From: Ylistrum balloti
Taxonomy: Eukaryota
Reading direction: 5' to 3'
Assembly (NCBI RefSeq): GCF_031769215.1
Contig: NW_026782399.1
Location: forward strand, 1-64,000
Length of the DNA stretch: 64,000 nt
Shown: in pieces, positions 4,832 through 51,130 of the stretch
Layout: each line of letters opens with the position of its first letter
How positions within the stretch are numbered: position 1 is the stretch's first letter
Notes under the pieces: generated by a model
Databases searched by the model: none
Told to the model about the DNA's origin: nothing
What the model saw: the letters and a program-made list of their open reading frames with translations, nothing else
Made by a program: the position numbers and the translations under genes

Positions 4832-5090
4832 TTTTAAAAAGTTTTCATTAAAATATGTTAATCTTAACTAAGTTTTTAAAACAATTATTTGACTATATTA
4901 CTTTAATAATATAGATGAGCAGAAAAAAATGAATAAAAAGAATAAAGTTAACATGGTAAACAAAGATTTAGAAGCTAATCGAATTATCTCAAATTCACTT
5001 AATAAATTTAGCTTATCAAAAATAGCACTCTTTTTAATATTGTTAGTTTTTATACTTATTGCTTGTAGTGACACAGACAGTGGTGGTAGC
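4832..5090 (+). repeat. Duplicated upstream region plus lipoprotein leader (second copy 6354..6612; shorter copies before 7937 and 8338)
   Basis: Near-identical sequence at a 1522-bp offset, from TTTTAAAAAGTTTTC through GACAGTGGTGGTAGC. Confidence 0.9.
4893..4914. promoter_or_regulatory. Inverted repeat CTATATTA-N6-TAATATAG overlapping a TTGACT hexamer; identical copies at 6415..6436, 7904..7925, 8302..8323
   Basis: Perfect 8-bp arms 11-14 nt upstream of each locus-1 paralog start; operator role is inferred. Confidence 0.45.
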
Positions 5091-6263
5091 ATCATCGTGT
5101 TTGTGCCTATTACAGACAGTGGTGATAGCACCCCCGTGCCTATTTACACCCTCACCTATTCTACCGCTTTTAAGGACAACACCAATGATATAGACGGATT
5201 GGGTGGGGCGCTATCTGTTGCCGTTAGTCTTGATGGAAGCAATGTCTATGTGGCAAGTTCTTTCGATCATGCTTTGGCAGTGTTTAATAGAAATACGACA
5301 ACTGGCGTACTCACCTATTCCACTAATTTTAAAGACAATACTAATGGAGTGGACGGATTGGGTGGGGCGGAATCTGTGACCGTTAGTCCTGATGGAAACA
5401 ATGTCTATGTGGCAGGTCGGGATGATGATGCCTTGGCAGTGTTTAATAGAGATACGACAACTGGTGCACTCATCTATAGCACCGTTTTTAAAGATGGACA
5501 AGGTGGAGTGGACGGATTGGATGGGGCGGAATCTGTGACCGTTAGTCCTGATGGAAACAATGTCTATGTGGCAGGTCGGGATGATGATGCCTTGGCAGTG
5601 TTTAATAGAGATACGACAACTGGTGCACTCATCTATAGCACCGTTTTTAAAGATGGACAAGGTGGAGTGGACGGATTGGGTGGGGTGCAATCTGTGACCG
5701 CTAGTCCTGATGGAAACAATGTTTATGTGGTAGGTCGGGATGATGATGCCTTGGCAGTGTTTAATAGAGATACGACAACTGGTGCACTCATCTATAGCAC
5801 CGTTTTTAAAGACGGACAAAATGGAGTGGATGGATTGAATAGTGTTCGATCTGTGACCGTTAGTCCTGATGGAAACAATGTCTATGTGGTAGGTAATAGC
5901 GATAGAGCCTTGGCGGTGTTTAACAGGAATAAGACAACTGGTGTACTTATCTATAGCACCGTTTTTAAAGACGGACAAGGTGGAGTGGATGGATTGTATG
6001 GTGCTCAATCTGTCACCGTTAGTCCTGATGGAAACAATGTCTATGTGGTAGGTGATTTCGATGATGCCTTGGCAGTGTTTAATAGAAATACGACAACTGG
6101 CACACTCATCTATTCCACTAATTTTAAAGACGGACAAGGTGGAGTGGACGGATTGGATGGGGCTCAATCTGTGACCGTTAGTCCTGATGGAAACAATGTC
6201 TATGTGGTGGCAAGTTTGAACGATCATGCCTTGGCAGTGTTTAACAGGAGTAGGATCCAGTGA
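4929..6263 (+). CDS. Lipoprotein with 7-bladed beta-propeller (lactonase/YVTN-like 53-aa repeats), no InlB repeat
   Basis: Lipobox LIA-C46; seven repeats YSTxFKDGxxGVDGLxGAxSVTVSPDGNNVYVxGxxDDALAVFNRxTTTGxL with a 159-bp period. Confidence 0.85.
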   Translation: MNKKNKVNMVNKDLEANRIISNSLNKFSLSKIALFLILLVFILIACSDTDSGGSIIVFVPITDSGDSTPVPIYTLTYSTAFKDNTNDIDGLGGALSVAVSLDGSNVYVASSFDHALAVFNRNTTTGVLTYSTNFKDNTNGVDGLGGAESVTVSPDGNNVYVAGRDDDALAVFNRDTTTGALIYSTVFKDGQGGVDGLDGAESVTVSPDGNNVYVAGRDDDALAVFNRDTTTGALIYSTVFKDGQGGVDGLGGVQSVTASPDGNNVYVVGRDDDALAVFNRDTTTGALIYSTVFKDGQNGVDGLNSVRSVTVSPDGNNVYVVGNSDRALAVFNRNKTTGVLIYSTVFKDGQGGVDGLYGAQSVTVSPDGNNVYVVGDFDDALAVFNRNTTTGTLIYSTNFKDGQGGVDGLDGAQSVTVSPDGNNVYVVASLNDHALAVFNRSRIQ

Positions 6264-6450
6264 AAATGTTGATTCTCGGCTTTATTTATTTGACTTTATT
6301 TAGTAATAAGCGGTGTTTTTCGAGCTCGAGCTTAATTCCACTTGACAAAATCATTTTAAAAAGTTTTCATTAAAATATGTTAATCTTAACTAAGTTTTTA
6401 AAACAATTATTTGACTATATTACTTTAATAATATAGATGAGCAGAAAAAA

Positions 6451-7542
6451 ATGAATAAAAAGAATAAAGTTAACATAGCAAACAAATATTTAGAAGCTAA
6501 TCGAATTATCTCAAATTCACTTAATAAATTTAGCTTATTAAAAATAGTACTCTTTTTAATATTGTTAGTTTTTATATTTATTGCTTGTAGTGATACAGAC
6601 AGTGGTGGTAGCACCACTACGCCTATTTACACCGTAATCTTTAATACAGACGGTGGTAGCACGGTTGTTTCCCAGCAAGTCAATTCTGGTGAGAAAGCAA
6701 CTGAACCTACCGATCCTACACGAGCAAATTACAGCTTTAGTGGATGGTACGAAGATGAATCATTGACCACTATTTTTTATTTTGAAAGTACGATAGTTAC
6801 TAACGACCTAACTCTGTATGCCAAATGGAACATAATAGAATATACTCTCACCTATAGCACCGTTTTTAAAGATGGACAAGATGGAGTAGACGGATTGGAA
6901 GGGGCATTTTCTGTCACCGTTAGTCCTGATGGAGAAAGTGTCTATGTGGTAGGTTTTGACGATGATGCCTTGGCAGTGTTTAACAGAGATACAACAACTG
7001 GGGCACTTACCTATAGCACCGTTTTTAAAGATGGACAAGATGGCGTGGACGGATTAGATGGGATAACCTCTGTCGTGGTTAGTCCTTATGGAAACAATGT
7101 CTATGTGGTAGGCTATAATGATAATGCCTTGGCAGTGTTTAACAGAGATACGGCAACTGGCGCACTTACCTATAGCACCGTTTTTAAAGATGGACAAGAT
7201 GGCGTGGACGGATTGAATAGAGCATCTTCTGTTACCGTAAGTTCTGATGGAAACAATGTGTATGTGGCAGGTCGGGATGATGATGCCTTGGCAGTGTTTA
7301 ACAGAGATACGGCAACTGGCGCACTTACCTATAGCACCGTTTTTAAAGACGGACAAGGTGGAGTAGACGGATTGGGGGGTACTCTATTTGTCACCATTAG
7401 CCCTGATGGAAACAATGTCTATGTGGCAGGTCGAGATGATAATGCCTTGGCAGTGTTTAACAGAGATACGGCAACTGGCGTACTCACCTATAGTACCGTT
7501 TTTAGAGACGGACAAGATGGCGTGGACGGATTAGTCACCTGA
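6451..7542 (+). CDS. Lipoprotein with 1 InlB B-repeat plus propeller, truncated after 4 intact blades
   Basis: FIA-C lipobox; FNTDGGS...FSGWY...LTLYAKW unit; stops at DGLVT* where the fifth blade has a deletion. Confidence 0.8.
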   Translation: MNKKNKVNIANKYLEANRIISNSLNKFSLLKIVLFLILLVFIFIACSDTDSGGSTTTPIYTVIFNTDGGSTVVSQQVNSGEKATEPTDPTRANYSFSGWYEDESLTTIFYFESTIVTNDLTLYAKWNIIEYTLTYSTVFKDGQDGVDGLEGAFSVTVSPDGESVYVVGFDDDALAVFNRDTTTGALTYSTVFKDGQDGVDGLDGITSVVVSPYGNNVYVVGYNDNALAVFNRDTATGALTYSTVFKDGQDGVDGLNRASSVTVSSDGNNVYVAGRDDDALAVFNRDTATGALTYSTVFKDGQGGVDGLGGTLFVTISPDGNNVYVAGRDDNALAVFNRDTATGVLTYSTVFRDGQDGVDGLVT

Positions 7543-7874
7543 TGGAAACAATGTCTATGTGGCAGTTGATGACGGTGTTTGACAGATGATAACTGGTGCC
7601 TTACCTATAGCACCGTTTTTAAAGACAGAGATACGGCAACTGACCGGCGATGGAAACAATATCTATCTGATGGCAATTTTTAATAGTTTTGTTGATGCCT
7701 TGGCAGTGTTTTTAGTACTCACCTATAGTACCGTTTTTAAAGACGGTAATAAAGGTGTGGACGGATTGGGTGGGGCGAAATCTGTGACCGTTAGTCCTGA
7801 TGGAAACAATGTCTATGTGATAAGTGCTTCAGGATGATGCCTTGGCAGTGTTTAACAGGAGTAGTAGCCAGTGA
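7543..7874 (+). pseudogene. Scrambled remnants of blades 5-7 of the 6451 gene
   Basis: Blade DNA fragments with several small indels; ends with the paralog terminus AGGAGTAGTAGCCAGTGA; extra T near 7831 (AGTGCTTCAGGATGA vs paralog AGTTCTCAGGATGAT). Confidence 0.75.
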
Positions 7875-7936
7875 AATTGCGATTCTCGGCTTTATTTATT
7901 TGACTATATTACTTTAATAATATAGATGAAAAAAAA

Positions 7937-8272
7937 ATGAATAAAAGAATAAAGTTAACACAGTAAACAAATATTTAGAAGCTAATCGAATTATCTCAAA
8001 TTGACTGGAAATTTAGCTTATTAAAAATAGCATTCTTTTTAATATTGTTAGTTTTTATACTTATTGCTTGTAGTGACACAGACAGTGGTGGTAGCATCAC
8101 CGGACCTATTTACACCTTTAACTATAGTACCGTTTTTAAAGACGGACAAGGTGGAGTGGACGGATTGGGTGGGGCGAAATCTGTGACCGTTAGTCCTGAT
8201 GGAAACAATGTCTATGTGGTAAGTTCTCAGGATGATGCCTTGGCAGTGTTTAACAGGAGTAGTAGCCAGTGA
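7937..8272 (+). pseudogene. One-blade paralog with frameshifted leader
   Basis: ATGAATAAAAGAAT has one A fewer than paralog ATGAATAAAAAGAAT, plus another indel near 8000; lipobox IACSDTDSGG is joined directly to one terminal blade ending RSSSQ*. Confidence 0.8.
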
Positions 8273-8337
8273 AATTGCGATTCTCGGCTTTATTTATTTG
8301 ACTATATTACTTTAATAATATAGATGAGCAGAAAAAA

Positions 8338-9639
8338 ATGAATAAAAAGAATAAAGTTAACACAGTAAACAAATATTTAGAAGCTAATCGAATTATCTCA
8401 AATTCACTTAATAAATTTAGCTTATTAAAAATAGCATTCTTTTTAATATTGTTAGTTTTTATACTTATTGCTTGTAGTGACACAGACAGTGGTGGTAGCA
8501 TCACCGGACCTATTTACACCTTTAACTATAGCACCGTTTTTAAAGACGGTACTAACGGTGTGGACGGATTGGGTGGGGCGAAATCTGTGACCGTTAGTCC
8601 TGATGGAAACAATGTCTATGTGGGAGGTTGGGATGATGATGCCTTGGCAGTATTTAACAGAAACACGACAACTGGAGCACTTACCTATTCCACTAATTTT
8701 AAAGATGGACAAGATGGACAAGATGGAGTGGATGGATTGGGTCATGCAATCTCTGTCACGGTAAGTCCTGATGGAAACAATGTCTATGTGGCAGGCTATA
8801 ATGATGATGCCTTGGCAGTGTTTAACAGAAACACGACAACTGGTGCACTCACCTATAGCACCGTTTTTAAAGACGGTACTAACGGTGTGGATGGATTGAA
8901 AGGGGCATATTCTGTCACGGTAAGTCCTGATGGAAACAATGTGTATGTGGCAGGTTTTGACGATGATGCCTTGGCAGTGTTTAACAGAAACACGACAACT
9001 GGTGCACTCACCTATAGTACCGTTTTTAAAAACGGTACTAACGGTGTGGATGGATTGGATGGTCCAGCCGCTGTCATGGTTAGTCCAGATGGGGAAAATG
9101 TCTATGTGGCAGGCTATAATGATGATGCCGTGGCAGTGTTTAACAGAAATACAACAACTGGTGTACTCACTTATAGCACCGTTTTAAAAGACGGAGTAAA
9201 TGGTGTGGACGGATTGGATGGTCCAGTCGCTGTCACCGTTAGCCCTGATGGAAACAATGTGTATGTGGTAAGTCTTGTCGATGATGCTTTGGCTGTGTTT
9301 AACAGAAATACAACAACTGGTGTACTCACTTATAGCACCGTTTTAAAAGACGGTACTAACGGTGTGGACGGATTGGATGGGGCGAAATCTGTGACCGTTA
9401 GTCCTGATGGAAACAATGTCTATGTGGTGAGTTCTCAGGATGATGCCTTGGCAGTGTTTAACAGAAACACGACAACTGGGGCACTCAACTATAGCACCAT
9501 TTTTAAAGACGGTACTAACGGTGTGGACGGATTGGATGGGGCATATTCTGTCACGGTTAGCCCTGATGGAAACAATATCTATGTGGTAAGTGAGGAGGAT
9601 GATGCCTTGGCAGTGTTTAATAGGAGTAGTAGCCAGTGA
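8338..9639 (+). CDS. Lipoprotein with 7-bladed beta-propeller, no InlB repeat
   Basis: LIA-C lipobox; seven 53-aa blades; blade 2 carries a 9-bp duplication (DGQDGQDG, 8704-8727). Confidence 0.85.
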   Translation: MNKKNKVNTVNKYLEANRIISNSLNKFSLLKIAFFLILLVFILIACSDTDSGGSITGPIYTFNYSTVFKDGTNGVDGLGGAKSVTVSPDGNNVYVGGWDDDALAVFNRNTTTGALTYSTNFKDGQDGQDGVDGLGHAISVTVSPDGNNVYVAGYNDDALAVFNRNTTTGALTYSTVFKDGTNGVDGLKGAYSVTVSPDGNNVYVAGFDDDALAVFNRNTTTGALTYSTVFKNGTNGVDGLDGPAAVMVSPDGENVYVAGYNDDAVAVFNRNTTTGVLTYSTVLKDGVNGVDGLDGPVAVTVSPDGNNVYVVSLVDDALAVFNRNTTTGVLTYSTVLKDGTNGVDGLDGAKSVTVSPDGNNVYVVSSQDDALAVFNRNTTTGALNYSTIFKDGTNGVDGLDGAYSVTVSPDGNNIYVVSEEDDALAVFNRSSSQ

Positions 9640-9745
9640 AAGTTAGTGGTATTGCTTTAGTGAATTATATAGAATATAAGAATAATCATGCACATTAGCT
9701 TATCGTGGCATTTTAAAAAGTTTCTAAGAAAGCTTATAGTTCCCG

Positions 9746-19665: not shown

Positions 19666-22398
19666 GTGAGGAAAACAATTCTTATTGATTGCTATGGTCT
19701 TTTTTATAGGTCCTATTATGCCTTTATAAAAAATCCCCTTGTAAACAGTAAGGGCGAAGAAACCTCTGTTATTTTCTCTTTTTTTAATTCACTACACAAG
19801 GTGATTAAGGAACGGGAGCACGATCATCTTGTTTGTGTTTTGGATTCCAAAGGCAAAACATTTCGTCATGAAATCTTCAAAGAGTATAAGGCTCATCGTC
19901 CACCTATGCCGAATAGTCTTTCAAAGCAGATAAAAGTTATCGTTCAAGTGCTTGATTTCTTGGGCATTCCAGTTGTTTCAAAAACCTCTTTGGAAGCTGA
20001 TGATCTCATTGCTCATTACTCGAGACAATCACAAGAAGAAGTAGAAATTTTCTCTCACGATAAGGACTTGATGCAACTAGTCAATGAAAGAGTCCGTGTT
20101 GTTCAATTAGATCGCCAAAACCAACAGTATGTGATTTTTGATCAAGAGAGAGTCGAAAAAAAATTCCAGACACCACCCAACCATCTTGTTGACTACTTAT
20201 CCTTGATGGGGGACAGTAGCGATAATATTCCCGGTGTAAAGGGAGTGGGTGAGAAAACCGCTGTCATGCTCATCAATGAATTTGGCGATCTTGATTCCAT
20301 CTATAAAAATTTAGATAAGATTCCAGAGAAACATAGGAAAAAGTTGATTCAGGATAAGAACTCAGCATTCATTTCTAGGGAATTAGTTTGCTTGAAAGAG
20401 CAATTAAATCGCCTTGACAAGTCTTTCATCGAAGATCTTCCTTCACTTAATGATCTCACTTATCAGTCTTGTCAAGCTGAAAAAATAAAAGACATTTGGG
20501 AACTACATGAATGCACTTCCTTGATTAAAAAGTATTCACTCCTCCCACCATTTGAAAAAATTGAAGGGAAAACCATCCTTGAGATTTTGAAAGGTATCTC
20601 ACCAACTGAAATTACAGAAGATAAAAATCACCTGAAGAGGTTCACTAGACACACCCTGCATCATGAAGAGTGGGGGGATCTTGTTGAAACAATAAAATTA
20701 CAAGGACAATTCGTCTTCGATTTGGAAACAACATCTTTAGTTCCTTTCGATGCTAAGGTGGTGTCGGCTGTTATTGTATTGCCAAATCAACACAGTTATT
20801 ACATTCCAGTTGTGACCCATAAACTAGACTTAGAAATGAAGTGGATCGAAACTTTTAAAAAAGTGCTTGGAAGCAATGAGATAAAAAAAATTGGACATAA
20901 TCTTAAATTTGAATATTCTATCTTAAAAGAAAAGGGAATTGAACTTAACGGAATCGAGCATGACACAATGATTCATGCTTACATGACTGAGCCAGACCTC
21001 AATGCATTCAAGTTAGAAGACCTGATTCAAAGTCATTTTGGGGTGAGTAAGCCTAGCTACAAAGAGATGAGTAAGGGGTATGAAAGCATCCTTGATATTC
21101 CAAAGGACCTATTGGAGGATTACACTTTTCAAGATGGGGAGTACACGACTTTACTTTATGAAATTCAAGTAAAAGGAAAGGCACTTAATGATAAGGAGTT
21201 GGACATTTACAAAAACTGGGAATTGCCTCTTCTTGTGGTACTTGCCAATATGGAATTTGAAGGAGTTGTTATTGACACGAACTATTTAAAAAATTTAGAA
21301 AAAATTCTCCAAACAAGTTTGTCGATTACTGAAAAAGAAATTATCGAATTAGCTGGCGAGGATTTTAATATTAATTCGACTAAGCAACTTCAAACTATTC
21401 TTTTTGAAAAATTGTCAATTAATCCTGTTAAGAAAACAAAAACCGGCTATTCCACGGATAACTATGTTTTAGAGAGATTAAAAAAGAATTATCCGATTGC
21501 TGAATCTTTATTGCAACACCGCAAGACAGCTAAACTTCTCAATACTTATGTGGAGGCACTTCCCAAATTAGTTCATCCTCGTACAGGTCGTATTCATACT
21601 CATTATAATCAATCCGTTACGGCTACAGGTCGGCTGAGTTCCACTTCTCCTAACTTGCAAAACATTCCAGTTAGTGAGGGAAGCCAGGGCATCCGTCGTG
21701 CTTTCGTGGTTGATTCGGGTTACGAAATTGTATCCATTGACTATTCCCAAGTAGAATTAAGGATTGTGGGTTTTTTATCTAAGGATGCCAAACTTCTAGA
21801 AGCCTATGAAAGTAATCGGGACATTCACACTCAAACCGCTCACCTATTATTTGGAAAGCCGATGGAGGATGTTCTCTCGGAGGAGAGAAAAATTGCCAAG
21901 ACGATTAATTTTTCAGTTATCTATGGCATATCGGCTTTCTCATTAGCAGAAGACTTGGGCATACCCCGTAACGATGCTCAAGTGTTTATTGACATATTTT
22001 TTTCAAATTACTCCAATGTGAAGAGTTATCAAGAAAAAATCCTTCACCAAGCTAGAACAAATGGTTGGGTGGAAACTTATTTCGGAAGGAAACGTTACAT
22101 CAAGGACATTAATTCTGAAAACATGATTGTAAAAAACCGTGCTGAGAGAATCGCCTTCAACACGGTCATTCAAGGGACTGCTTCCGATATCATTAAACGA
22201 GCAATGGTGAATGTTCAAAAAAAATTTGTAGGTTCACCGATCAAAATGGTCATGCAGGTGCATGATGAATTGGTTTTCTATGTGCCTACAGATTTAGTTA
22301 AAAAGACCGTCCCTCAACTTGAAAAATTATTAATTGATATTACACCTTTTGACGGAATATTAACCGTCAATACTACAATAGAGAAGCATTGGGGGTAG
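19666..22398 (+). CDS. polA: DNA polymerase I
   Basis: 5'-3' exonuclease (LMGDSSDNIPGVKGVG), 3'-5' exonuclease (FDLETT), polymerase (DYSQVELR, AKTINFSVIYG, QVHDEL). Confidence 0.97.
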   Translation: MRKTILIDCYGLFYRSYYAFIKNPLVNSKGEETSVIFSFFNSLHKVIKEREHDHLVCVLDSKGKTFRHEIFKEYKAHRPPMPNSLSKQIKVIVQVLDFLGIPVVSKTSLEADDLIAHYSRQSQEEVEIFSHDKDLMQLVNERVRVVQLDRQNQQYVIFDQERVEKKFQTPPNHLVDYLSLMGDSSDNIPGVKGVGEKTAVMLINEFGDLDSIYKNLDKIPEKHRKKLIQDKNSAFISRELVCLKEQLNRLDKSFIEDLPSLNDLTYQSCQAEKIKDIWELHECTSLIKKYSLLPPFEKIEGKTILEILKGISPTEITEDKNHLKRFTRHTLHHEEWGDLVETIKLQGQFVFDLETTSLVPFDAKVVSAVIVLPNQHSYYIPVVTHKLDLEMKWIETFKKVLGSNEIKKIGHNLKFEYSILKEKGIELNGIEHDTMIHAYMTEPDLNAFKLEDLIQSHFGVSKPSYKEMSKGYESILDIPKDLLEDYTFQDGEYTTLLYEIQVKGKALNDKELDIYKNWELPLLVVLANMEFEGVVIDTNYLKNLEKILQTSLSITEKEIIELAGEDFNINSTKQLQTILFEKLSINPVKKTKTGYSTDNYVLERLKKNYPIAESLLQHRKTAKLLNTYVEALPKLVHPRTGRIHTHYNQSVTATGRLSSTSPNLQNIPVSEGSQGIRRAFVVDSGYEIVSIDYSQVELRIVGFLSKDAKLLEAYESNRDIHTQTAHLLFGKPMEDVLSEERKIAKTINFSVIYGISAFSLAEDLGIPRNDAQVFIDIFFSNYSNVKSYQEKILHQARTNGWVETYFGRKRYIKDINSENMIVKNRAERIAFNTVIQGTASDIIKRAMVNVQKKFVGSPIKMVMQVHDELVFYVPTDLVKKTVPQLEKLLIDITPFDGILTVNTTIEKHWG

Positions 22399-25553: not shown

Positions 25554-25627
25554 CGCGTCCGGTAGGATTTGAACCCACGACCCTCTGATCCGAAGTCAGA
25601 TGCTCTAATCCGCTGAGCTACGAACGC
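25554..25627 (-). tRNA. tRNA-Arg (anticodon UCG), CCA not encoded
   Basis: Reverse complement GCGTTCG...TCTGA-CTTCGGA-TCAGA...GGTTCAAATCC...CGGACGC-G; acceptor, anticodon and T stems pair. Confidence 0.95.
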
Positions 25628-25689
25628 TTTTTTAAATTATATCATTAGTTGGAATTTTTAAAAGTGTTAATGAGGTGTGTGAAAGTGAT

Positions 25690-27414
25690 CTACTGATGAA
25701 CTTCTAAACACTCCTCACCAAGCATGTCAATAATTTTTATAGCAACTTTTCCTTTAACTTCTATTTTATATTCACCTTTAATTAAATCTTTTTTCTTTTT
25801 TGGCACATCACTATAAACAATGTTAAAAACTTTTCCATTATAATTATTATCTATTAAAACACAATCAATCATACTTCTAAAATCTTTTATCTCTTCTTTT
25901 AATAAACCTTTTTCATTTGACAATCTTTTTAGAATTGTAGGACTTGCAAAATTATTTATTTTAATAGTATTGTTTTTCAATTCCACTTGAGCTTTACAAG
26001 GTTCGTGGATCATAAATTCTTTATCTTCTAAATTGATAACTTCAAATTTATTGATACTCGATTTTTTATTCCACTCTTCAATTTCTTTTTTAGTATCTTC
26101 TCTTTGTCCTAAACAAATAATTTTTATATTCCTATCTTCTTCAGGTCTTTTTTTCAATTCTTCTTTAATATCTGTTATATCAAATAAAGATAATGGATGA
26201 TTTATTTCAATTATTTTAACTAAACTATTTCCTATCTTCCCTTCAAAAAAATCATCATTTAATTTTTCCACTCCAAGTTTTTCAAAAGCCAGTTCAATAG
26301 CTTCAGTTCTTAAAATTTGTAAATCATAATCATTAACTTTGAAATGAGAAAATCTATTACAAAAATTTTTCTCCTTGATTAAATCCTTTTCCTGCTCTTT
26401 AATGATTTTTTGAATTCTTTTAGCAGTGGTTTGAATAGCACCTTTATTTATATCTGCCCCAATCCATTTTCTACCTAATTTTTGAGCAACTGCTTGGGTC
26501 GTTCCACTTCCCATAAAACAATCAAAAATGATTGAATCTTCATTAGAAGATGCTTTGATAATTCTTTCTAATAATGCTTCTGGTTTTTGGGTGGGGTAGT
26601 CTAAAATTTGATTGTGTGCATATCCAATAGTTGCCACATCACTCCACCAGTCCTCTAACAATTTACCCCTATTCTCAATCAATTTCACTTTCTCTTAAAA
26701 ACTGATATTGCCTGTAAATGAACTACTTCCTGATACTGATGTTGATTTTTTATATTTTTTTCTTAAATTTTCTGTATCAAAAATGTGTTCTTTAGTTTTT
26801 GAATATAGTAATATATTGTCATGTTTTCTTGGAAAATTTCTATTTTTTGTGACCACCACTATAACACCATACAATTTCATTTCCAAAATTCTCTTCTCCA
26901 AAAACTTCATCTAATAAACATCGTAAATGATGAGATTTATGCCAATCACAATGCAAGTAAATGCTTCCTTTATCACTTAACAATTCTTTTAGTAAAATTA
27001 ATCTTTCATACATAAATTGTAAATAGTCATCATTTTTCCATATATCAAAATATTGTTTTTGTTCTAATTTGTTATGTCCTTCTCCCTCTAATTTTTCATT
27101 ATTTTCATCCCCTCGTAATTCTACTTTTCTAATATAATCTGCTTTACTATCAAAGGGAGGGTCAATATAGATGAGGTCTATTTTTCCTCTAAATCCATTA
27201 TTTAATAGATTTGTTAATACTTCAATATTATCTCCATGAAATAATAAATTACTCCAATATTTTTCTAAATCATTGAAATTTAATTTTATTTCTTTTTTAT
27301 CATTGTTAAAAGTTCTACCAATTGTGCTGGATAATTTTCTTCAATATTGATTGTTTTTTTCCCAATCCAGTTAAGCATAGGTCTTCCTTTAACTTCATTT
27401 ATTTTTTCACTCAT
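25690..27414 (-). pseudogene. mod: Type III RM DNA methyltransferase (Mod), three lesions
   Basis: ATG 27414 (MSEKINEVKGRPMLNWIG); frameshift near 27313; next frame has HGDN and IYIDPPF; frameshift near 26850 (WCYSGG / TKNRNFPRKHD); in-frame TAA 26695-26697; then [14 protein letters not shown] and DCFMGSGTT to 25690. Confidence 0.85.
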
Positions 27415-27480
27415 TTTAAAACCTCATATTTATAAATTGTTTATCTCCATAACTATGTTTGAATTCTCATTTAATAATAA
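27411..27480. repeat. Degenerate second copy of the res 3' end (direct repeat with 28727..28798)
   Basis: TCATTTTAAAACCTCAT..AAATTGTTTATCT(T)CCATAACTATGTTTGAATTCTCA is present at both positions. Confidence 0.88.
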
Positions 27481-27498
27481 AAACAATGCTAAAACGTA

Positions 27499-27608
27499 TC
27501 GAAATTTTGTCATTTTTTCGACATATCACCAATAATATGTCGAAATTTTGTCATTTTTTCGACATATCACCAATAATATGTCGAAATTTTGTCATTTTTT
27601 CGACATAT
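27499..27608. repeat. 41-bp tandem repeat (2.7 identical copies) built of 11-bp inverted arms
   Basis: Unit TCGAAATTTTGTCATTTTTTCGACATATCACCAATAATATG starts at 27499, 27540 and 27581; arms ATATGTCGAAA / TTTCGACATAT. Confidence 0.92.
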
Positions 27609-27612
27609 AATT

Positions 27613-28719: not shown

Positions 28720-28726
28720 CTCTCCT

Positions 28727-31308: not shown

Positions 31309-31401
31309 TTTTCTTCTTCTGTATATTCTTTGATATTATACAATATGATATTTATACTACTGTACTTTGCTACACTTCGTCCTAATTACAAATTAGGGAA
31401 A

Positions 31402-31737
31402 CTATTTCAAAAGTTTTGCGATTTTCGCTTCCATCTCAGTTTCCGTGATAGCAAGATGTGAAGCATGCCAGATGGCTTTTGAGTTTTCGATAAGAAATAT
31501 TTGCGGAGATTGGTGTGTGATGGAAAAAAAATCAGCGATATGGTTGGACAGTGGGCGCCCTTCAACGACTAAGACGATGTAAATGAGGGTGTCGGGATTC
31601 CTGCCCTTGTATTTTTCTACATTACGATGAGCTTGAGCTGAGAGCGGGCAGATAGTAGAGTGTTTAAAAAGAAAAAAAGGTTTTTTTTGACTTTCTATTA
31701 AATGATTGAAATCTTCAATGGTTTCTAATAGCTTCAT
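31402..31737 (-). CDS. ytxJ: YtxJ / DUF2847 thioredoxin-fold protein
   Basis: FKHSTICPLS, ITHQSPQ motifs. Confidence 0.85.
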   Translation of the reverse strand: MKLLETIEDFNHLIESQKKPFFLFKHSTICPLSAQAHRNVEKYKGRNPDTLIYIVLVVEGRPLSNHIADFFSITHQSPQIFLIENSKAIWHASHLAITETEMEAKIAKLLK

Positions 31738-44669: not shown

Positions 44670-46379
44670 ATGAATAAAACCAGTAAAATTAACACAACAA
44701 ACAAAGCTTTAAAAGCTAATCAAATTACTTTCCATTCATTAATAATTAAGTTCAGACTCTCACAATTAATATTACTATTATTGTCTTTTCTTCTTCTTAC
44801 ATCTTGTTTTTTTGATAAAATTAACCCCACTTACACAACAACTTTTGACAGTCAAGGTGGAAGCACGGTTCCAGATCAGCAAGTCAATTATGGCGAGAAA
44901 GTAACTCAACCTTCTAATCCTACACGAGTAAATTATAACTTTGGTGGATGGTATGAAGATGAATCATTGACCACTATTTTTAATTTTGCAAATACAGTAA
45001 TCACTAGTGATCGAACTTTGTATGCCAAATGGAACGCAGGTCAAAACGCAGTTCAATATGCCGTAACATTTGATAGTCAGGGTGGAAGCACGGTTACAGC
45101 GCAACAAGTCAATTCTGGCGAGAAAGTAATTCAACCTTCTAATCCTACACGAACACATTACAACTTTGGTGGATGGTATCAAGATGAATCATTGACCACT
45201 GTTTTTGATTTTGAAAATACAGTAATCACTAGTGATCGAACTTTGTATGCCAAATGGAACATAATAGAATACACCTTCACCTATGGTGCCGTTTTTAAAG
45301 ATGGAGTAAATGGTGTGGACGGATTGAATCATGCAGAATCTGTTGCCGTTAGTCCAGATGGGAACAATGTCTATGTGACAGGTTTTAAAGATGATGCCGT
45401 GGCAGTGTTTAACAGAAATACAACAACTGGTGTACTCACTTATAGCACCATTTTAAAAGACGGAGTAAATGGTGTGGACGGATTGGATGGTGTATATTCT
45501 ATCACCGTTAGTCCAGATGGAAAGAATGTTTATGTGACAGGTTATTACGATAATACTTTGGTAGTGTTTAACAGAAATAGGACAACTGGGGCACTCACCT
45601 ATAGCACCTTTTTTGAAGACGGACGATTTGGTGTGGACGGATTAAATGAAGCAGCTTCTGTCATCGTTAGTCCAGATGGGAACAATGTCTATGTGGCAGG
45701 TTATCAAGATGATGCCGTGGCAGTGTTTAACAGAAATACAGCAACTGGGGCACTCGACTATAGCACCATTTTTAAAGACGGAGTAGATGGTGTGGACGGA
45801 TTGGATGGAGCTCAATCTGTCACCGTTAGTCCAGATGGGGAAAATGTGTATGTGGCAGGTTATCAAGATGATGCCGTAGCAGTGTTTAACAGAAATACGA
45901 CAACTGGTGTACTTACCTATAGCACCGTTTTTAAAGACGGAGTAAATGGTGTGGACGGATTGGATGGAACTCAATCTGTCACCGTTAGCTCTGATGGGAA
46001 CAACGTGTATGTGGCAGGTTATGAAGATGATGCCGTAGCAGTGTTTAACAGAAATACAACAACTGGTGGACTCACCTATAGCACTGTTTTAAAAGACGGG
46101 CAAGGTGGTGTGGACGGATTATTTGGTTCAACTTCTGTCATTGTTAGTCCTGGTGGAAACGATGTCTATGTGGCAGGTTATAATGATTCTGCCGTGGTAG
46201 TGTTTAACAGAAATACGACAACTGGAGCACTCACTTATAGCACCGTTTTTAAAGACGGAGTAAATGGTATGGACGGATTGGCTGGTGCTCGATCTGTTGC
46301 CGTTAGCCCTGATGGAAAAAATATCTATGTTGCAAGTGAGAATGATAATGCCTTGGCAGTGTTGAACGGTAGCGAGTGA
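44670..46379 (+). CDS. Lipoprotein with 2 InlB B-repeats plus 7-bladed beta-propeller
   Basis: LTS-C lipobox; two FDSQGGS...GGWY...LYAKW units; seven blades ending GSE*. Confidence 0.87.
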   Translation: MNKTSKINTTNKALKANQITFHSLIIKFRLSQLILLLLSFLLLTSCFFDKINPTYTTTFDSQGGSTVPDQQVNYGEKVTQPSNPTRVNYNFGGWYEDESLTTIFNFANTVITSDRTLYAKWNAGQNAVQYAVTFDSQGGSTVTAQQVNSGEKVIQPSNPTRTHYNFGGWYQDESLTTVFDFENTVITSDRTLYAKWNIIEYTFTYGAVFKDGVNGVDGLNHAESVAVSPDGNNVYVTGFKDDAVAVFNRNTTTGVLTYSTILKDGVNGVDGLDGVYSITVSPDGKNVYVTGYYDNTLVVFNRNRTTGALTYSTFFEDGRFGVDGLNEAASVIVSPDGNNVYVAGYQDDAVAVFNRNTATGALDYSTIFKDGVDGVDGLDGAQSVTVSPDGENVYVAGYQDDAVAVFNRNTTTGVLTYSTVFKDGVNGVDGLDGTQSVTVSSDGNNVYVAGYEDDAVAVFNRNTTTGGLTYSTVLKDGQGGVDGLFGSTSVIVSPGGNDVYVAGYNDSAVVVFNRNTTTGALTYSTVFKDGVNGMDGLAGARSVAVSPDGKNIYVASENDNALAVLNGSE

Positions 46380-46496: not shown

Positions 46497-49459
46497 ATGA
46501 ATAAAACCAGTAAAATTAACACAACAAACAAAGCTTTAAAAGCTAATCAAATTACTTTCTATTCACCCTCACAATTAATATTACTATTATTGTCTTTTAT
46601 CCTTCTTACATCTTGTTTTAAAAGAATTTACCCTACTTATGAAATAACATTTGATAGTCGAGGCGGTAGCATGATTCTTCCCCAGGAAATCAATTATGGC
46701 GAGACAGTAACTGAACCTTCTAATCCTACACGAGTAAATTATAACTTTGGTGGATGGTACGAAGATGAATCATTGACCACTATTTTTGATTTTGAAAATA
46801 TGATAGTTACTAACGACCTAACTCTTTATGCCAAATGGAATGCAGTTCAATATACCATAACATTTGACAGTCAAGGTGGTAGCACGGTTCCAGCTCAGCA
46901 AGTCAATTATGGCGAGACAGTAATTCAACCTTCTAATCCTACACGAGTAAATTATAACTTTGGTGGATGGTACGAAGATGAATCATTGACCACTGTTTTT
47001 AATTTTGCAAATATGGTAGTTACTAACGACCTAACTCTTTATGCCAAATGGAACGCAGATCAAAACGCAGTTCAATATACCATAACATTTGACAGTCAAG
47101 GTGGAAGCACGGTTCCAGATCAACAAGTCAATTCTGGAGAGACAGTAATTCAACCTTCTAATCCTACACGAACACATTACAACTTTGGTGGATGGTATCA
47201 AGATGAATCATTGACTACTGTTTTTAACTTTGCAAATACAGTAATCACTAGCGATCGAACTTTGTATGCCAAATGGAACAGAATTGAATATACCGTAACA
47301 TTTGATAATCAAGGTGGAAGCACGGTTCCAGATCAACAAGTCAATTCTGGAGAGACAGTAATTCAACCTTCTAATCCTACACGAACACATTACAACTTTG
47401 GTGGATGGTATCAAGATGCATCATTGACTACTGTTTTTAATTTTGCAAATACAGTAATCACTAGTGATCGAACTTTGTATGCCAAATGGAATGCAGTTCA
47501 ATATACCATAACATTTGACAGTCAAGGTGGAAGCACGGTTACAGCGCAACAAGTCAATTCTGGAGAGACAGTAATTCAACCTTCTAATCCTACACGAACA
47601 CATTACAATTTTGGTGGATGGTATCAAGCATCATTGACTACTGTTTTTAATTTTGTAAATACAGTAATCACTAGTGATCGAACTTTGTATGCCAAATGGA
47701 ACAGAATTCAATATGCCGTAACATTTGATAGTCAGGGTGGTAGCACGGTTCCAGATCAACAAGTCAATTCTGGAGAGACAGTAATTCAACCTTCTAATCC
47801 TACACGAACACATTACAACTTTGGTGGATGGTATCAAGATGAATCATTGACCACTGTTTTTAACTTTGCAAATACAGTAATCACTAGTGATCGAACTTTG
47901 TATGCCAAATGGAATGCAGTTCAATATACCATAACATTTGACAGTCAAGGTGGAAGCACGGTTACAGCGCAACAAGTCAATTCTGGAGAGAAAGTAATTC
48001 AACCTTCTAATCCTACACGAACACATTACAACTTTGGTGGATGGTATCAAGATGCATCATTGACTACTGTTTTTAATTTTGTAAATACAGTAATCACTAG
48101 TGATCGAACTTTGTATGCCAAATGGAACAGAATTCAATATGCCGTAACATTTGATAGTCAGGGTGGTAGCACGGTTACAGCGCAACAAGTCAATTCTGGA
48201 GAGAAAGTAACTCAACCTTCTAATCCTACACGAACACATTACAACTTTGGTGGATGGTATCAAGATGAATCATTGACCACTGTTTTTGATTTTATAAATA
48301 CAGTAATCACTAGTGACCAAACTTTATATGCCAAATGGAACATAATAGAATACACCTTCACCTATGGTGCCGTTTTTAAAGACGGGCAAGGTGGTGTGGA
48401 CGGATTGAATCATGCAGAATCTGTTGCCGTTAGTCCAGAGGGGAAAATGTCTATGTGACAGGTTTTAAAGATGATGCCGTGGCAGTGTTTAACAGAAATA
48501 CAACAACTGGTGTACTCACTTATAGCACCGTTTTTAAAGACGGGCAAGGTGGTGTGGACGGATTGGATGGTGTAGATTCTATCACCGTTAGTCCAGATGG
48601 AAACAATGTTTATGTGACAGGTTATTACGATAATACTTTGGTAGTGTTTGACAGAAATAGGACAACTGGGGCACTCACCTATAGCACCTTTTTTGAAGAC
48701 GGACGCTTTGGTGTGAACGGATTAAATGAAGCAGCTTCTGTCATCGTTAGTCCAGATGGGAACAATGTCTATGTGGCAGGTTATAAAGATGATGCCGTGG
48801 CAGTGTTTAACAGAAATACAGCAACTGGGGCACTCGCCTATAGCACCATTTTTAAAGACGGAGTAGATGGTGTGGACGGATTGAATGGAGCTCAATCTGT
48901 CACCGTTAGCTCTGATGGAAAAAATATCTATGTGGCAGGTTATAATGATGATTCCGTAGCAGTGTTTAACAGAAATACGAAAACTGGTGTACTTGCCTAT
49001 AGCACCGTTTTAAAAGACGGGCAAGGTGGTGTGGACGGATTGGATGGAGCTCAATCTGTCACCGTTAGTCCAGATGGGGAAAATGTCTATGTGGCAGGTT
49101 ATCAAGATAATGCCGTGGCAGTGTTTAACAGAAATACGACAACTGGGGCACTCACCTATAGCACCGTTTTTAAAGACGGAGTAAATGGTGTGGACGGATT
49201 AGTTGGTTCAACTTCTGTCATTGTTAGTCCTGGTGGAAACGATGTCTATGTGGCAGGTTATGAAGGTAATGCATTGGCAGTGTTTAACAGAAATACGACA
49301 ACTGGAGCACTCACCTATAGTACCGTTTTTAAAGACGGAGTAAATGGTATGGACGGATTGGCTGGTGCTCGATCTGTTGCCGTTAGTCCTGATGGAAAAA
49401 ATATCTATGTTGCAAGTGAGAATGATAATGCTTTGGCAGTGTTGAACGGTAGCGAGTGA
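46497..49459 (+). pseudogene. Lipoprotein with 8 InlB B-repeats plus 7-bladed propeller, split by a 1-nt deletion at 48439/48440
   Basis: ORFs 46497..48458 and 48455..49459 join if T is restored (CCAGAGGGGAAAAT vs paralog CCAGATGGGGAAAAT); head is nearly identical to that of the 44670 gene. Confidence 0.85.
46645..48350 (+). repeat. Tandem array of eight ~213-bp InlB B-repeat units
   Basis: 213-bp period (210 where a codon is lost near 47625); units 4-5 resemble units 6-7 as a 426-bp higher-order repeat. Confidence 0.9.
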
Positions 49460-49603: not shown

Positions 49604-51130
49604 ATGAATAAAAACAATAATATCATCAAAGCAATTAATCATTTGATAGCTAGCCAAATTAGATTAAATTCGCTAATTAAGTTTACTGGATCACCATTAA
49701 CCTTCTTCTTTGTTTTATGGACTTTTATAATCCTTACATCTTGTGGAAGTGGAATCGTAGAACCTGTTCACACCGTAACATTTAATACCGACGGCGGAAG
49801 TGCAATTGCTTCCCAGCAAGTCAATCACCGCGAGAAGGCTACAATGCCCACCGAGACCCCTACCTTTAGTGGTATGACATTTGAAGGGTGGTACCAAGAT
49901 GCAGCAGTGACCACTGTTTTTAACTTCGAAAATACAGAAATCAGAAGTAGTCTAACTGTGTATGCTAAGTGGAATGGGCATTCTTATTCCACCGTTTTAA
50001 AAAATAGCGAAAATGGGATACCTGATAACCCAAATTATAACCAAGCTAATAGAGCAATTACTGCTACTGCTAGCTCTGATGGAAAAAATGTCTATGTAAT
50101 GAGTAGTATATTGGGACTGGAGGTTTTGGTCGTGTTTAATAGAGATGCGACTACTGGTACACTCACCCATTCCACTAATATCTTTACGGCAGATGTAGGT
50201 GGAGGGACCGAAATGATGGGTGGTAGGGGTATCACCGTAAGTCCTGATGGAAAAAATGTATATGTATCTTTGTTCTCCTCTACTGCTCCTGCACCTGATG
50301 ATGGTGATGGCTTGGTAGTGTTTAACAGGAATACGACAACTGGATCACTCGCCTATAGCACCGTTTTAAAAGACAACAAGAATGGTGTGGATGGATTGGC
50401 TGGTGCATATACTATTACCGTTAGTCCTGATGGGAAAAATGTCTATGTGGCAGGTAGTACAGATGATGCCTTGGCAGTGTTTGACAGAGATACGACAACT
50501 GGGGCACTCACCTATAGCACCAATTTTAAAGACGGAGTAAATGGTGTGGACGGATTGGAAGGGGCAATCTTTATTGCGGTGAGCCCTGATGGGGAAAATG
50601 TCTATGTGGCAGGTTTTGACGATGATGCCTTGGCAGTGTTTAACAGAGATACGACAACTGGTGCACTCGCCTATAACGCCGTTTTTAAAGACAATCAAGG
50701 TGAAGTGGACGGATTGAATGAAGCATTTTCTGTCACCGTTAGTCCAGATGGGAAAAATGTCTATGTGGCAGGTTTTGAAGATGATGCCTTGGCAGTGTTT
50801 AACAGAGATACAGAAACTGGTGCACTTACCTATAGTAACGTTTTTAAAAACGGTACTAACGGGGTGGACGGATTGAATGGAGCATTTTCTGTCACCGTTA
50901 GTCCAGATGGGAAAAATGTTTATGTGGCAAGTGATGCAGATAATGCCTTAGTTGTGTTTAAAAGAAATACGACAACTGGTGCACTTACCTATAGTACCGT
51001 TTTTAAAGACGGAGTAAATGGTGTGGACGGATTGAAAGAAGCCCAATTTGTCACCCTTAGCCCCAATGGAAAAAGTATCTATGTGGGAGGTAGAGGAGAT
51101 GGTATTCTGGCAGTGTTTCACAGGAGGTAG
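49604..51130 (+). CDS. Lipoprotein with 1 InlB B-repeat plus 7-bladed propeller (blades 1-2 divergent, with loop insertions)
   Basis: LTS-C lipobox; FNTDGGS...FEGWY...YAKW; five consensus-like blades and two expanded ones. Confidence 0.85.
   Translation: MNKNNNIIKAINHLIASQIRLNSLIKFTGSPLTFFFVLWTFIILTSCGSGIVEPVHTVTFNTDGGSAIASQQVNHREKATMPTETPTFSGMTFEGWYQDAAVTTVFNFENTEIRSSLTVYAKWNGHSYSTVLKNSENGIPDNPNYNQANRAITATASSDGKNVYVMSSILGLEVLVVFNRDATTGTLTHSTNIFTADVGGGTEMMGGRGITVSPDGKNVYVSLFSSTAPAPDDGDGLVVFNRNTTTGSLAYSTVLKDNKNGVDGLAGAYTITVSPDGKNVYVAGSTDDALAVFDRDTTTGALTYSTNFKDGVNGVDGLEGAIFIAVSPDGENVYVAGFDDDALAVFNRDTTTGALAYNAVFKDNQGEVDGLNEAFSVTVSPDGKNVYVAGFEDDALAVFNRDTETGALTYSNVFKNGTNGVDGLNGAFSVTVSPDGKNVYVASDADNALVVFKRNTTTGALTYSTVFKDGVNGVDGLKEAQFVTLSPNGKSIYVGGRGDGILAVFHRR

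What the first reader, a model, noticed from the sequence alone, without database searches (positions are those of the whole stretch)
5150..6263. Two hypervariable sites per blade that should map to the same propeller face
Seen: variation concentrates at HV1 (DGL-x-x-A-x-S: GGAES, DGAQS, NSVRS, YGAQS, KGAYS, GHAIS, NEAAS, FGSTS, AGARS) and HV2 (YV-x-G/S-x-x-D: GRDD, GNSD, GDFD, GWDD, GYND, SLVD, SSQD, SEED, GFKD, GYYD). Changes are mostly non-synonymous and include aromatic and charged residues. Established: in YVTN/lactonase-type blades SVTVSPDG is strand a, NVYV strand b, ALAVF strand c; the d-a and b-c loops both lie on the top, ligand-binding face. Inference: 14 variable loops form one paratope-like surface on a constant frame. 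The Asp/Gly-rich DGxDGxDG linker may bind Ca2+ (speculative).
Basis: partly seen in the sequence, partly recalled or inferred. Interest (0 to 1): 0.75.

Follow-up and report, generated by a model that had tools for sequence, protein, structure and literature searches.

The report
Variable-faced propeller lipoproteins of a scallop bacterium
A bacterium whose DNA sits inside a scallop genome assembly carries a family of probable lipoproteins with a seven-bladed propeller head: the blades are near copies, and four positions per blade, all on one face, vary freely, which suggests a diversified binding surface rather than the sugar-lactone enzyme its database name implies.

Summary
In 34 in-register 53-residue blades from six paralogous genes in the window, entropy peaks at four columns: 24 and 27 (HV1) and 43 and 44 (HV2).

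A confident AlphaFold model (pLDDT 94.5) gives a seven-bladed lactonase/YVTN-type propeller. Its strand map puts the seven most variable columns at the end of the D-A loop, the start of inner strand A and the B-C loop. By propeller topology these all lie on the top face. Coordinates could not be inspected.

Non-synonymous change at the four columns runs at about 2.1-2.4 times the background synonymous rate (p about 1e-4; 0.017 after a conservative correction for choosing the columns). Against the columns' own synonymous sites the ratio is only 1.2-1.8 and not significant.

The same four columns are the most variable within 118 homologues from many phyla. No blade-specific residue is conserved there, which argues against a conserved active site. 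The proteins have lipoboxes, stalks of 0-8 repeats and acidic heads, and they fail the 6-phosphogluconolactonase model.

My best reading is a diversified ligand-binding head on a constant frame, analogous to fungal NLR WD40 repeats. The function is inferred, not shown. No canonical Ca2+ motif supports the Ca2+ idea.

The parts
4929..6263 (+). G1: lipoprotein gene of 444 aa with no stalk domain and a seven-bladed propeller head. This is the gene of the finding.
   Evidence: ORF. Pfam PF10282 Lactonase 1.5e-30. AF2 model pLDDT 94.5.
4929..5066 (+). Signal peptide with lipobox I-L-I-A-C. The Cys46 codon is at 5064-5066.
   Evidence: Translation. The lipobox pattern was read directly from the sequence. 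Cleavage and lipidation were not tested.
5133..6248 (+). Seven blade units of 159 nt (the last is 162 nt), starting at 5133, 5292, 5451, 5610, 5769, 5928 and 6087. The N-terminal strand D closes blade 7 as a velcro strand.
5202..5213 (+). Blade 1 HV1 (columns 24-27, GGAL)
5259..5264 (+). Blade 1 HV2 (columns 43-44, SF)
5361..5372 (+). Blade 2 HV1 (GGAE)
5418..5423 (+). Blade 2 HV2 (RD)
5520..5531 (+). Blade 3 HV1 (DGAE)
5577..5582 (+). Blade 3 HV2 (RD)
5679..5690 (+). Blade 4 HV1 (GGVQ)
5736..5741 (+). Blade 4 HV2 (RD)
5838..5849 (+). Blade 5 HV1 (NSVR)
5895..5900 (+). Blade 5 HV2 (NS)
5997..6008 (+). Blade 6 HV1 (YGAQ)
6054..6059 (+). Blade 6 HV2 (DF)
6156..6167 (+). Blade 7 HV1 (DGAQ)
6213..6221 (+). 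Blade 7 HV2 (SLN; the loop is one residue longer)
6451..8272 (+). G2: a decayed paralogue. It has a lipobox, one Flg_new stalk repeat and four intact blades (ORF 6451-7542). Blades 5-7 are riddled with deletions. A collapsed one-blade mini-gene follows at 8045-8272.
8338..9639 (+). G3: an intact paralogue of 433 aa with seven blades and no stalk. Its HV residues differ from those of G1.
44670..46379 (+). G4: paralogue with two Flg_new stalk repeats and seven blades.
46497..49459 (+). G5: paralogue with eight stalk repeats and seven blades. A 1-nt deletion in blade 1 (about 48446), relative to G4, splits it into two ORFs.
49604..51130 (+). G6: a more divergent paralogue with one stalk repeat and seven blades.

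Best explanation
G1 and its five paralogues in the window encode lipid-anchored, probably cell-surface proteins. Each has an optional stalk of 0-8 Listeria-Bacteroides (Flg_new) repeats and a seven-bladed lactonase/YVTN-type beta-propeller head.

The head is a constant frame. Its 53-residue blades are kept alike within each gene by intragenic recombination or recent amplification. Four positions per blade differ from blade to blade and from paralogue to paralogue: two at the mouth end of inner strand A with the preceding D-A loop, and two in the B-C loop.

These 28 residues, with two second-tier D-A loop positions per blade, ring the top opening of the propeller. That face is opposite the one where both chain termini, and hence the stalk and lipid anchor, emerge. 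I propose that this ring is a ligand-binding surface whose specificity is set by the variable residues, so the gene family provides a repertoire of binders for host, glycan or other extracellular ligands.

Shown here: the variability pattern, the fold, the strand map, the family-wide recurrence and the lack of conserved top-face residues.

Inferred: the face geometry (from topology, not coordinates), surface exposure, binding function and diversifying selection.
For: - Entropy peaks at columns 24, 27, 43 and 44.
- The AF2 model has pLDDT 94.5 and pTM 0.91 with 7x4 strands. Its nearest solved folds are 1RI6/6NAU Pgl, 3FGB and the 1L0Q YVTN S-layer propeller.
- The seven most variable columns all lie in the D-A loop, the start of strand A or the B-C loop.
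- In 12 independent sister-blade pairs, HV pN is 0.30 against a pooled pS of 0.14, while scaffold pN is 0.057 (Fisher p about 1e-4). A conservative simulation correcting for column choice gives p = 0.017.
- On the tree, HV N/site is 10.1 against a background S/site of 4.2.
- Close paralogues G4 and G5 (93% nt identity) differ at 8 of 24 HV codons against 46 of 296 others.
- Blades cluster by gene rather than by blade index, which indicates concerted evolution or independent amplification.
- In 118 homologues (1,079 blades) from many phyla, the same four columns rank among the top four in 40, 85, 81 and 75 proteins. They are rich in D, S, R, N, Y and F and poor in K.
- No HV position is conserved by blade index in 28 single-propeller homologues: the commonest residue reaches at most 13 of 28, usually 5-8.
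- Lipoboxes and stalk repeats are present. Homologues commonly have N-terminal signal-like hydrophobic runs (73 of 120, crude test) and accessory domains seen on extracellular proteins.
- The closest named relatives, from a Spirochaeta sp. MAG, have lipobox-like N-termini, an fn3 stalk and the same blade design.
Against: - No ligand, no expression data and no proof of surface exposure exist.
- The HV codons' own synonymous rate is also raised, so site-specific dN/dS is only 1.2-1.8 and per-site tests are not significant. Relaxed constraint at the few structurally free positions would give a similar picture.
- The columns were chosen after seeing the data.
- Gene conversion violates the tree model and can depress the scaffold's synonymous divergence.
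- In most distant homologues for which DNA was retrieved, synonymous sites are saturated and give no test.
- In G1, three adjacent blades share the same HV2.
- Model coordinates could not be read, so 'one contiguous surface' rests on topology.
- No sequencing runs were listed, so neither population variation nor assembly accuracy in these repeats could be checked.
Confidence: 0.55

Rival explanations
1. Neutral drift on a young repeat. The blades were amplified or homogenised recently from a consensus-like unit, and the four columns are simply the only side chains with no structural role. They drift freely, and the variation carries no binding function.
For: Site-specific dN/dS at the HV codons is 1.2-1.8 and not significant. 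Highly repetitive lactonase-like propellers are known to arise continually by amplification (PMC9218822). Decayed copies (G2, possibly G5) show gene turnover.
Against: HV non-synonymous divergence exceeds the pooled synonymous rate about two-fold. The other surface loops (SPDG, NTTTG) are tightly conserved. The same four columns are the variable ones in 118 homologues of very different ages. Their composition is biased towards aromatic, acidic and amide residues and depleted in Lys, despite an AT-rich genome.
Confidence: 0.25
2. Extracytoplasmic enzyme family. Each head is a lactonase-type or other hydrolase whose active site is built from blade-specific top-face residues, and the paralogues differ in substrate.
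For: Pfam PF10282 and SGL matches. The nearest solved folds include Pgl (1RI6, 6NAU) and the periplasmic gluconolactonase PpgL 6IGB. Propeller active sites sit at the top of the central channel, where column 27 lies.
Against: NCBIfam 6-phosphogluconolactonase equivalog scores are 33-66 bits against a cut-off of 370. No top-face residue is conserved by blade index among homologues. The heads have only 1-2 His and no Cys. The stalk-and-anchor architecture is typical of binders.
Confidence: 0.1
3. Programmed antigenic or phase variation. Silent or partial copies (G2 fragments, mini-genes) donate HV patches to expressed genes by segmental gene conversion, changing the exposed face during colonisation.
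For: Partial and collapsed copies lie next to intact genes. HV2 motifs recur in different paralogues: GRD x5, GYN x5, GFD x3. There are mosaic differences between G4 and G5.
Against: No within-sample variation could be examined, because no runs were listed. There is no dedicated cassette array or recombination signal. The host is an invertebrate without antibody-type immunity. The same pattern occurs in free-living phyla.
Confidence: 0.1

Closest known systems
Fungal HNWD/NLR WD40 sensor domains (het-e, het-d, het-r of Podospora anserina) with 'high internal conservation' repeats
   Same: The propeller repeats are kept highly similar by concerted evolution. About four codons per repeat are hypervariable, and these map to the interaction face of the propeller (PMC12222747). 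This is the closest match in design logic.
   Different: The fungal domains are WD40 (about 42 aa) rather than lactonase/YVTN blades (53 aa). They are intracellular NACHT-containing receptors rather than secreted lipoproteins. Diversifying selection and repeat-number polymorphism are demonstrated in the fungi, whereas selection is only moderately supported here and all intact copies have seven blades.
Highly repetitive 'Lactonase-like' (PF10282) beta-propellers catalogued by Pereira and Lupas 2022
   Same: Same Pfam family and same phenomenon of near-identical blades. The paper lists two distinct lactonase-like families among recently amplified propellers (PMC9218822).
   Different: The passages I read (a term search and section 12) do not analyse which positions vary, the lipoprotein and stalk context, or paralogue families. 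The four-column top-face pattern does not appear in those passages.
6-phosphogluconolactonase YbhE/Pgl (1RI6, 6NAU) and periplasmic gluconolactonase PpgL (6IGB)
   Same: Seven-bladed propeller. These are the best Foldseek and profile matches, and they are the source of the database name '6-phosphogluconolactonase-like'.
   Different: Sequence identity is 17-20%. The equivalog model fails by a wide margin. The blades of the enzymes are divergent rather than near copies. The window proteins carry a lipobox and a stalk. No conserved top-face residues are found.
YVTN propeller of the Methanosarcina mazei surface-layer protein (1L0Q) and the Leptospira lipoprotein antigen Lp49 (3BWS)
   Same: Both are cell-envelope proteins that mount a seven-bladed propeller of this superfamily on Ig-like or PKD-like domains. 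1L0Q scores E 6.6e-15 with the family profile, and Lp49 is a weak hit at E 4e-4.
   Different: No hypervariable columns or multigene repertoire were found described for them in the texts I read. Their blades are divergent, and the sequence relationship to Lp49 is marginal.

Membership tests
Pfam PF10282 Lactonase, 7-bladed beta-propeller (domain family) | Score above the Pfam gathering threshold | tested here: met
   G1 107 bits, G2 77.9 bits and G3 108.5 bits against a cut-off of 21.7.
Pfam PF10282 Lactonase, 7-bladed beta-propeller (domain family) | Seven four-stranded blades, with a fold like solved members | tested here: met
   The AF2 model has 28 strands and pLDDT 94.5. Foldseek top hits are 1RI6 and 6NAU, with TM 0.81 normalised by target length.
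6-phosphogluconolactonase Pgl/YbhE (NCBIfam NF008258 equivalog) | Score at or above the equivalog cut-off of 370 bits | tested here: not met
   34.7 bits (G1), 33.1 bits (G2) and 65.5 bits (G3).
6-phosphogluconolactonase Pgl/YbhE (NCBIfam NF008258 equivalog) | Cytoplasmic enzyme without an export signal (own knowledge of the pentose-phosphate enzyme) | tested here: not met
   All six paralogues begin with a hydrophobic signal ending in a lipobox Cys.
6-phosphogluconolactonase Pgl/YbhE (NCBIfam NF008258 equivalog) | Conserved catalytic pocket residues at the top of the channel | tested here: inconclusive
   No top-face residue is conserved by blade index among 28 homologues. I had no verified list of Pgl catalytic residues to compare against.
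YVTN beta-propeller repeat (TIGR02276) | Repeat model score at or above 27.85 bits | tested here: inconclusive
   G3 scores 38.1 bits (met). G1 scores 20.7 and G2 17.9 (below the cut-off).
Ca2+-dependent six-bladed lactonases (SGL/PON/SMP30 type) | Six blades with a central Ca2+ held by conserved acidic or amide residues | tested here: not met
   The model has seven blades. The channel-mouth residue (column 27) is the most variable position. The SGL Pfam match is blade-level only.
Bacterial lipoprotein | Signal peptide ending in a lipobox [LVI][ASTVI][GAS]C | tested here: met
   L-I-A-C in G1, G2 and G3, and L-T-S-C in G4, G5 and G6. Processing itself is not testable here.
High-internal-conservation repeat sensors with hypervariable sites (HNWD-type) | Repeats highly similar within a gene, clustering by gene rather than by position | tested here: met
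   TRF reports 82-87% matches. The blade tree clusters by gene.
High-internal-conservation repeat sensors with hypervariable sites (HNWD-type) | A few hypervariable codons per repeat on the interaction face | tested here: met
   Four columns per blade, all at the top-face end. This rests on topology, not coordinates.
High-internal-conservation repeat sensors with hypervariable sites (HNWD-type) | Diversifying selection at those codons | tested here: inconclusive
   The ratio is 2.1-2.4 against the pooled synonymous rate (p 1e-4; 0.017 corrected), but 1.2-1.8 and not significant against the codons' own synonymous sites.
High-internal-conservation repeat sensors with hypervariable sites (HNWD-type) | WD40 repeats attached to a NACHT/STAND NTPase | tested here: not met
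   No such domains are present. The blades are lactonase-type and the protein is a lipoprotein. It is therefore an analogue, not a member.

The most novel reading that the evidence does not exclude
Secreted lactonase-type propellers with near-identical blades form a widespread bacterial 'constant frame, variable face' recognition scaffold. Specificity would be written in four residues per blade and re-assorted by blade-level recombination among paralogues. That would make it an extracellular, prokaryotic counterpart of the fungal NLR WD40 repertoires. In this scallop-associated bacterium it would serve as a repertoire of host- or glycan-binding heads on stalks of different lengths.
Probability: 0.2. 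Interest if true: 0.8.

Novelty: new variant of a known kind. Interest (0 to 1): 0.5.

Why it matters
If the top face is a tunable binding surface, this very large and almost unstudied family would need re-labelling. It had over 3,900 significant hits in one capped word search, and they are annotated as 'lactonase' or '6-phosphogluconolactonase'. They would instead be a class of extracellular recognition proteins built on the same principle as repeat-based immune receptors.

The family would also offer a natural, highly regular seven-fold scaffold with 28 defined specificity positions, which is of interest for binder engineering.

Finally, it would give a handle on how an uncultured bivalve-associated bacterium interacts with its host. 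If the variation is only drift, the case is still a clean example of concerted evolution in propeller repeats, and a warning about homology-based enzyme names.

Tried and rejected
1. Reads. The look-up of sequencing runs listed no run for 4900-9700. I could not test within-population variation at the HV sites, the reality of the G5 frameshift or the assembly of the repeats.

2. Close orthologues. Scans of genome contigs and metagenome contigs gave nothing closer than 57-59% identity. The apparent full-length matches L082-L086 turned out to be ordinary family members without the shared N-terminus. Allele-level comparison was therefore impossible.

3. dN/dS in distant homologues. In six of the eight usable proteins synonymous sites are saturated (pS 0.5-0.7). 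Only L001 and L005 were informative, and both pointed the same way as the window.

4. Taxonomy from GuaA. The best named relatives are only about 52-55% identical and come from many phyla.

5. Model coordinates are not exposed to scripts, so no solvent-accessibility or distance mapping was possible.

6. The promoter and terminator scan was not above chance.

7. Ca2+ motif. There is no DxDxDG or D.[DN].[DN]G motif in any head.

8. A diversity-generating retroelement was considered and set aside. The variation is among blades and paralogues at four codons per blade, not an adenine-specific pattern against a template repeat. I did not run a systematic search for a reverse transcriptase.

9. Literature searches for PpgL catalytic residues, Lp49 and YVTN variability gave nothing usable.
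Full report
WHAT IS THERE

The finding lies in G1 (4929-6263, + strand, 444 aa). It is one of three adjacent paralogues: G1, the decayed G2 (6451-8272) and G3 (8338-9639). A second cluster lies 35 kb away: G4 (44670-46379), G5 (46497-49459, split into two ORFs) and G6 (49604-51130).

Each gene starts with a hydrophobic signal ending in a lipobox Cys. The lipobox is L-I-A-C in G1-G3 and L-T-S-C in G4-G6. A stalk of Listeria-Bacteroides repeats (Pfam Flg_new, 5e-22 in G2) follows in some copies: none in G1 and G3, one in G2 and G6, two in G4 and eight in G5. Seven tandem 53-residue (159-nt) units complete each intact protein.

The window is ordinary bacterial chromosome, with GuaA, PolA, MutS and signal peptidase. 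The identical protein is filed at NCBI under the scallop Ylistrum balloti as '6-phosphogluconolactonase-like' (P0001, 99% identity, contig of 70,996 bp). The contig is therefore a bacterial passenger in a mollusc assembly.

The nearest named relatives of the propeller are two proteins of a Spirochaeta sp. MAG (61-67% identity). GuaA has no named relative above about 55%, so the lineage is poorly sampled and I leave the taxon open.

CHECK OF THE OBSERVATION

I cut 34 blades in register from all paralogues.

- Entropy is 3.50 bits at column 27, 3.04 at column 44, 2.71 at column 43 and 2.61 at column 24.
- A second tier (columns 17, 18 and 26) has 1.6-1.9 bits.
- Several columns are invariant: Y9, G22, L23, S32, G35, Y39, V40 and V50.

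The hypervariable core is four codons per blade rather than seven. Within G1, blades 2-4 share the same HV2.

On a parsimony reconstruction the four columns take 103 non-synonymous and 15 synonymous changes. That is 30% of all non-synonymous changes in 7.5% of the columns.

STRUCTURE AND FACES

An AlphaFold2 model of mature G1, built on an alignment of 32 family members, has mean pLDDT 94.5 and pTM 0.91 and shows 28 strands.

Mapped onto the blade unit, the elements are:

- Strand D: columns 7-14
- D-A loop: columns 15-25
- Strand A: columns 26-31
- A-B loop: columns 32-36
- Strand B: columns 37-42
- B-C loop: columns 43-46
- Strand C: columns 47-53
- C-D loop: columns 1-6 of the next unit

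The N-terminal strand serves as strand D of the last blade (velcro closure).

In a four-strand antiparallel meander the D-A and B-C connections lie at one end and the A-B and C-D connections at the other. This follows from established knowledge of propeller topology. Columns 24 and 27 (end of the D-A loop and first residues of the innermost strand) and columns 43 and 44 (B-C loop) are therefore on the same, 'top' face. Column 27 lines the mouth of the central channel.

With first blades excluded, the seven most variable columns (27, 44, 24, 43, 17, 26, 18) all fall in these top-end positions. Mean entropy is 0.62 bits in the bottom C-D loop and 0.47 in the bottom A-B loop. The chance of seven out of seven falling there is about 2e-4.

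Both chain termini emerge at the opposite face, because strand D runs bottom to top and strand C runs top to bottom. The stalk and lipid anchor should therefore point away from the variable face. This is an inference.

I could not read the model's coordinates, so the mapping is topological rather than metric.

Foldseek and profile searches place the fold next to Pgl/YbhE (1RI6, 6NAU), the Bacteroides structural-genomics 'putative 6-phosphogluconolactonases' (3FGB, 3SCY, 4QRJ), PpgL (6IGB) and the YVTN propeller of an archaeal S-layer protein (1L0Q). Leptospira Lp49 (3BWS) is a weak hit.

SELECTION

Nei-Gojobori estimates over all blade pairs give a scaffold dN/dS of 0.37-0.40. For the four HV columns dN is about 1.0-1.1. 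That gives a ratio of 1.7-1.8 against their own synonymous sites and about 3 against the scaffold dS.

Tree-based counts give HV N/site of 10.1 against a background S/site of 4.2, a ratio of 2.4. The HV codons' own S/site is 8.2, however, and per-site binomial tests are not significant.

Twelve phylogenetically independent sister-blade pairs give the following:

- HV pN: 0.30
- Pooled pS: 0.14
- Scaffold pN: 0.057
- Fisher p: about 1e-4

Because the columns were picked after seeing the data, I simulated the worst case, in which all 53 columns are neutral and the best four are taken. That gives p = 0.017. With 20 or fewer free columns, p is below 0.001.

Between the close paralogues G4 and G5 (93% nt identity), 8 of 24 HV codons differ against 46 of 296 others.

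Blades cluster by gene rather than by blade index. This is the signature of concerted evolution or independent amplification, so the HV differences persist against homogenisation.

Taken together, the HV sites evolve much faster than the scaffold and about twice as fast as synonymous sites overall. A strict site-specific omega above 1 is not demonstrated. Gene conversion also undermines tree-based tests.

THE PATTERN IS FAMILY-WIDE

The word search returned 3,954 significant relatives among the 8,000 candidates scored. Named hits come from Chloroflexi, Planctomycetes, Bacteroidota, Thioploca, the SAR202 cluster, Myxococcota and other groups, and many are annotated 'beta-propeller fold lactonase family protein'. 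Genome and metagenome scans agree.

I cut 1,079 blades from 118 of these proteins and computed entropy within each protein. The same four columns rank among the four most variable in 40, 85, 81 and 75 of the 118 proteins. No other column exceeds 18.

Pooled, these positions are rich in D, S, R, A, N, Y, G and F, and poor in K at 1.8%.

In 28 single-propeller homologues aligned with G1, no HV position is conserved by blade index. The commonest residue reaches at most 13 of 28, typically 5-8 of 28, with 9-15 residue types per position. The invariant columns are all scaffold residues.

This is the opposite of what a conserved active site would give. The NCBIfam 6-phosphogluconolactonase equivalog scores only 33-66 bits against a cut-off of 370. 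The heads have pI of about 4.05-4.3, only 1-2 His and no Cys. Many homologues begin with signal-like hydrophobic segments (73 of 120, crude test). Some carry fn3, PKD, collagen or other accessory domains recorded; the domain names are from my own knowledge of those accessions.

INTERPRETATION

My best-supported reading is a repertoire of lipid-anchored, stalked binding heads. A constant seven-fold frame displays 28 variable residues around the top opening, plus 14 second-tier residues. Confidence is 0.55.

Three rivals remain:

- Neutral drift at the only unconstrained positions (0.25).
- An extracytoplasmic enzyme family with blade-specific catalytic residues (0.10).
- A programmed gene-conversion variation system that uses the decayed copies as donors (0.10).

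The Ca2+ idea has no motif support. It remains untested rather than refuted, since the heads are very acidic.

COMPARISON WITH WHAT IS KNOWN

Pereira and Lupas (PMC9218822) list two lactonase-like (PF10282) families among highly repetitive, recently amplified propellers. The passages I read (a term search and section 12) do not analyse which positions vary.

The closest analogue in design is the WD40 sensor domain of the Podospora HNWD NLRs. Its repeats are kept 80-100% identical by concerted evolution, and four codons per repeat are hypervariable, under diversifying selection and located on the interaction surface (PMC12222747).

The present case shares that logic but differs in three ways. 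It uses a different propeller lineage, it is a secreted bacterial lipoprotein, and it lacks any NTPase module. It is therefore an analogue, not a member.

My text searches found no paper describing hypervariable top-face positions in lactonase/YVTN propellers. I therefore rate it a new variant of a known kind. The library does not cover all journals.

LIMITS

- There are no reads, no close orthologues and no coordinates.
- Function and localisation are inferred.
- The assembly of such repeats may contain errors. The 1-nt deletion in G5 cannot be told apart from a sequencing error.
- G2's many internal deletions look like real decay.

Noticed in passing
window 1-64000: The whole window is bacterial chromosome (GuaA 12700-14250, PolA 19666-22398, MutS 57035-59761). 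Its proteins are filed at NCBI under the scallop Ylistrum balloti, for example as '6-phosphogluconolactonase-like'. GuaA has no named relative above about 55% identity, so the bacterium belongs to a poorly sampled lineage.
   Followed up: partly
window 25554-31500: A low-GC island (25-27% GC against about 36%) lies beside a tRNA gene (25554-25627). It carries a DNA methylase fragment (25690-26688), a Fic/DOC protein (27613-28719) and two ORFs without Pfam matches. It is probably an integrated mobile element.
   Followed up: partly
window 7465-8660: Blades 5-7 of G2 carry several internal deletions. From 7723 to 8660 a 404-bp unit (gene end, intergenic spacer, signal peptide and one blade) is repeated 2.3 times. 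ORF 8045-8272 encodes a 75-aa one-blade mini-lipoprotein. These are footprints of unequal recombination between blades of neighbouring paralogues.
   Followed up: partly
window 48440-48460: G5 is split into ORFs 46497-48458 and 48455-49459 by a single-base deletion, plus one substitution, in blade 1 relative to the otherwise identical stretch of G4. This is either a real pseudogene or an assembly error. It could not be decided without reads.
   Followed up: partly
window 8702-8727: A 9-nt tandem repeat (AAGATGGAC, 2.9 copies) lengthens the D-A loop of G3 blade 2 by three residues (DGQ). The Spirochaeta MAG relatives have longer, variable insertions at the same loop (P0038, P0061). Loop length is therefore a further variable on the top face.
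   Followed up: no
window 44670-51130: Stalk length differs among paralogues (0, 1, 2 or 8 Flg_new repeats) under similar heads. I confirmed the counts from the translations.
   Followed up: partly
L005 (Thermoanaerobaculia MAG, JAXLQW010000001.1): One reading frame across this locus holds 32 blade matches of the same family. It may be a giant multi-propeller protein.
   Followed up: no
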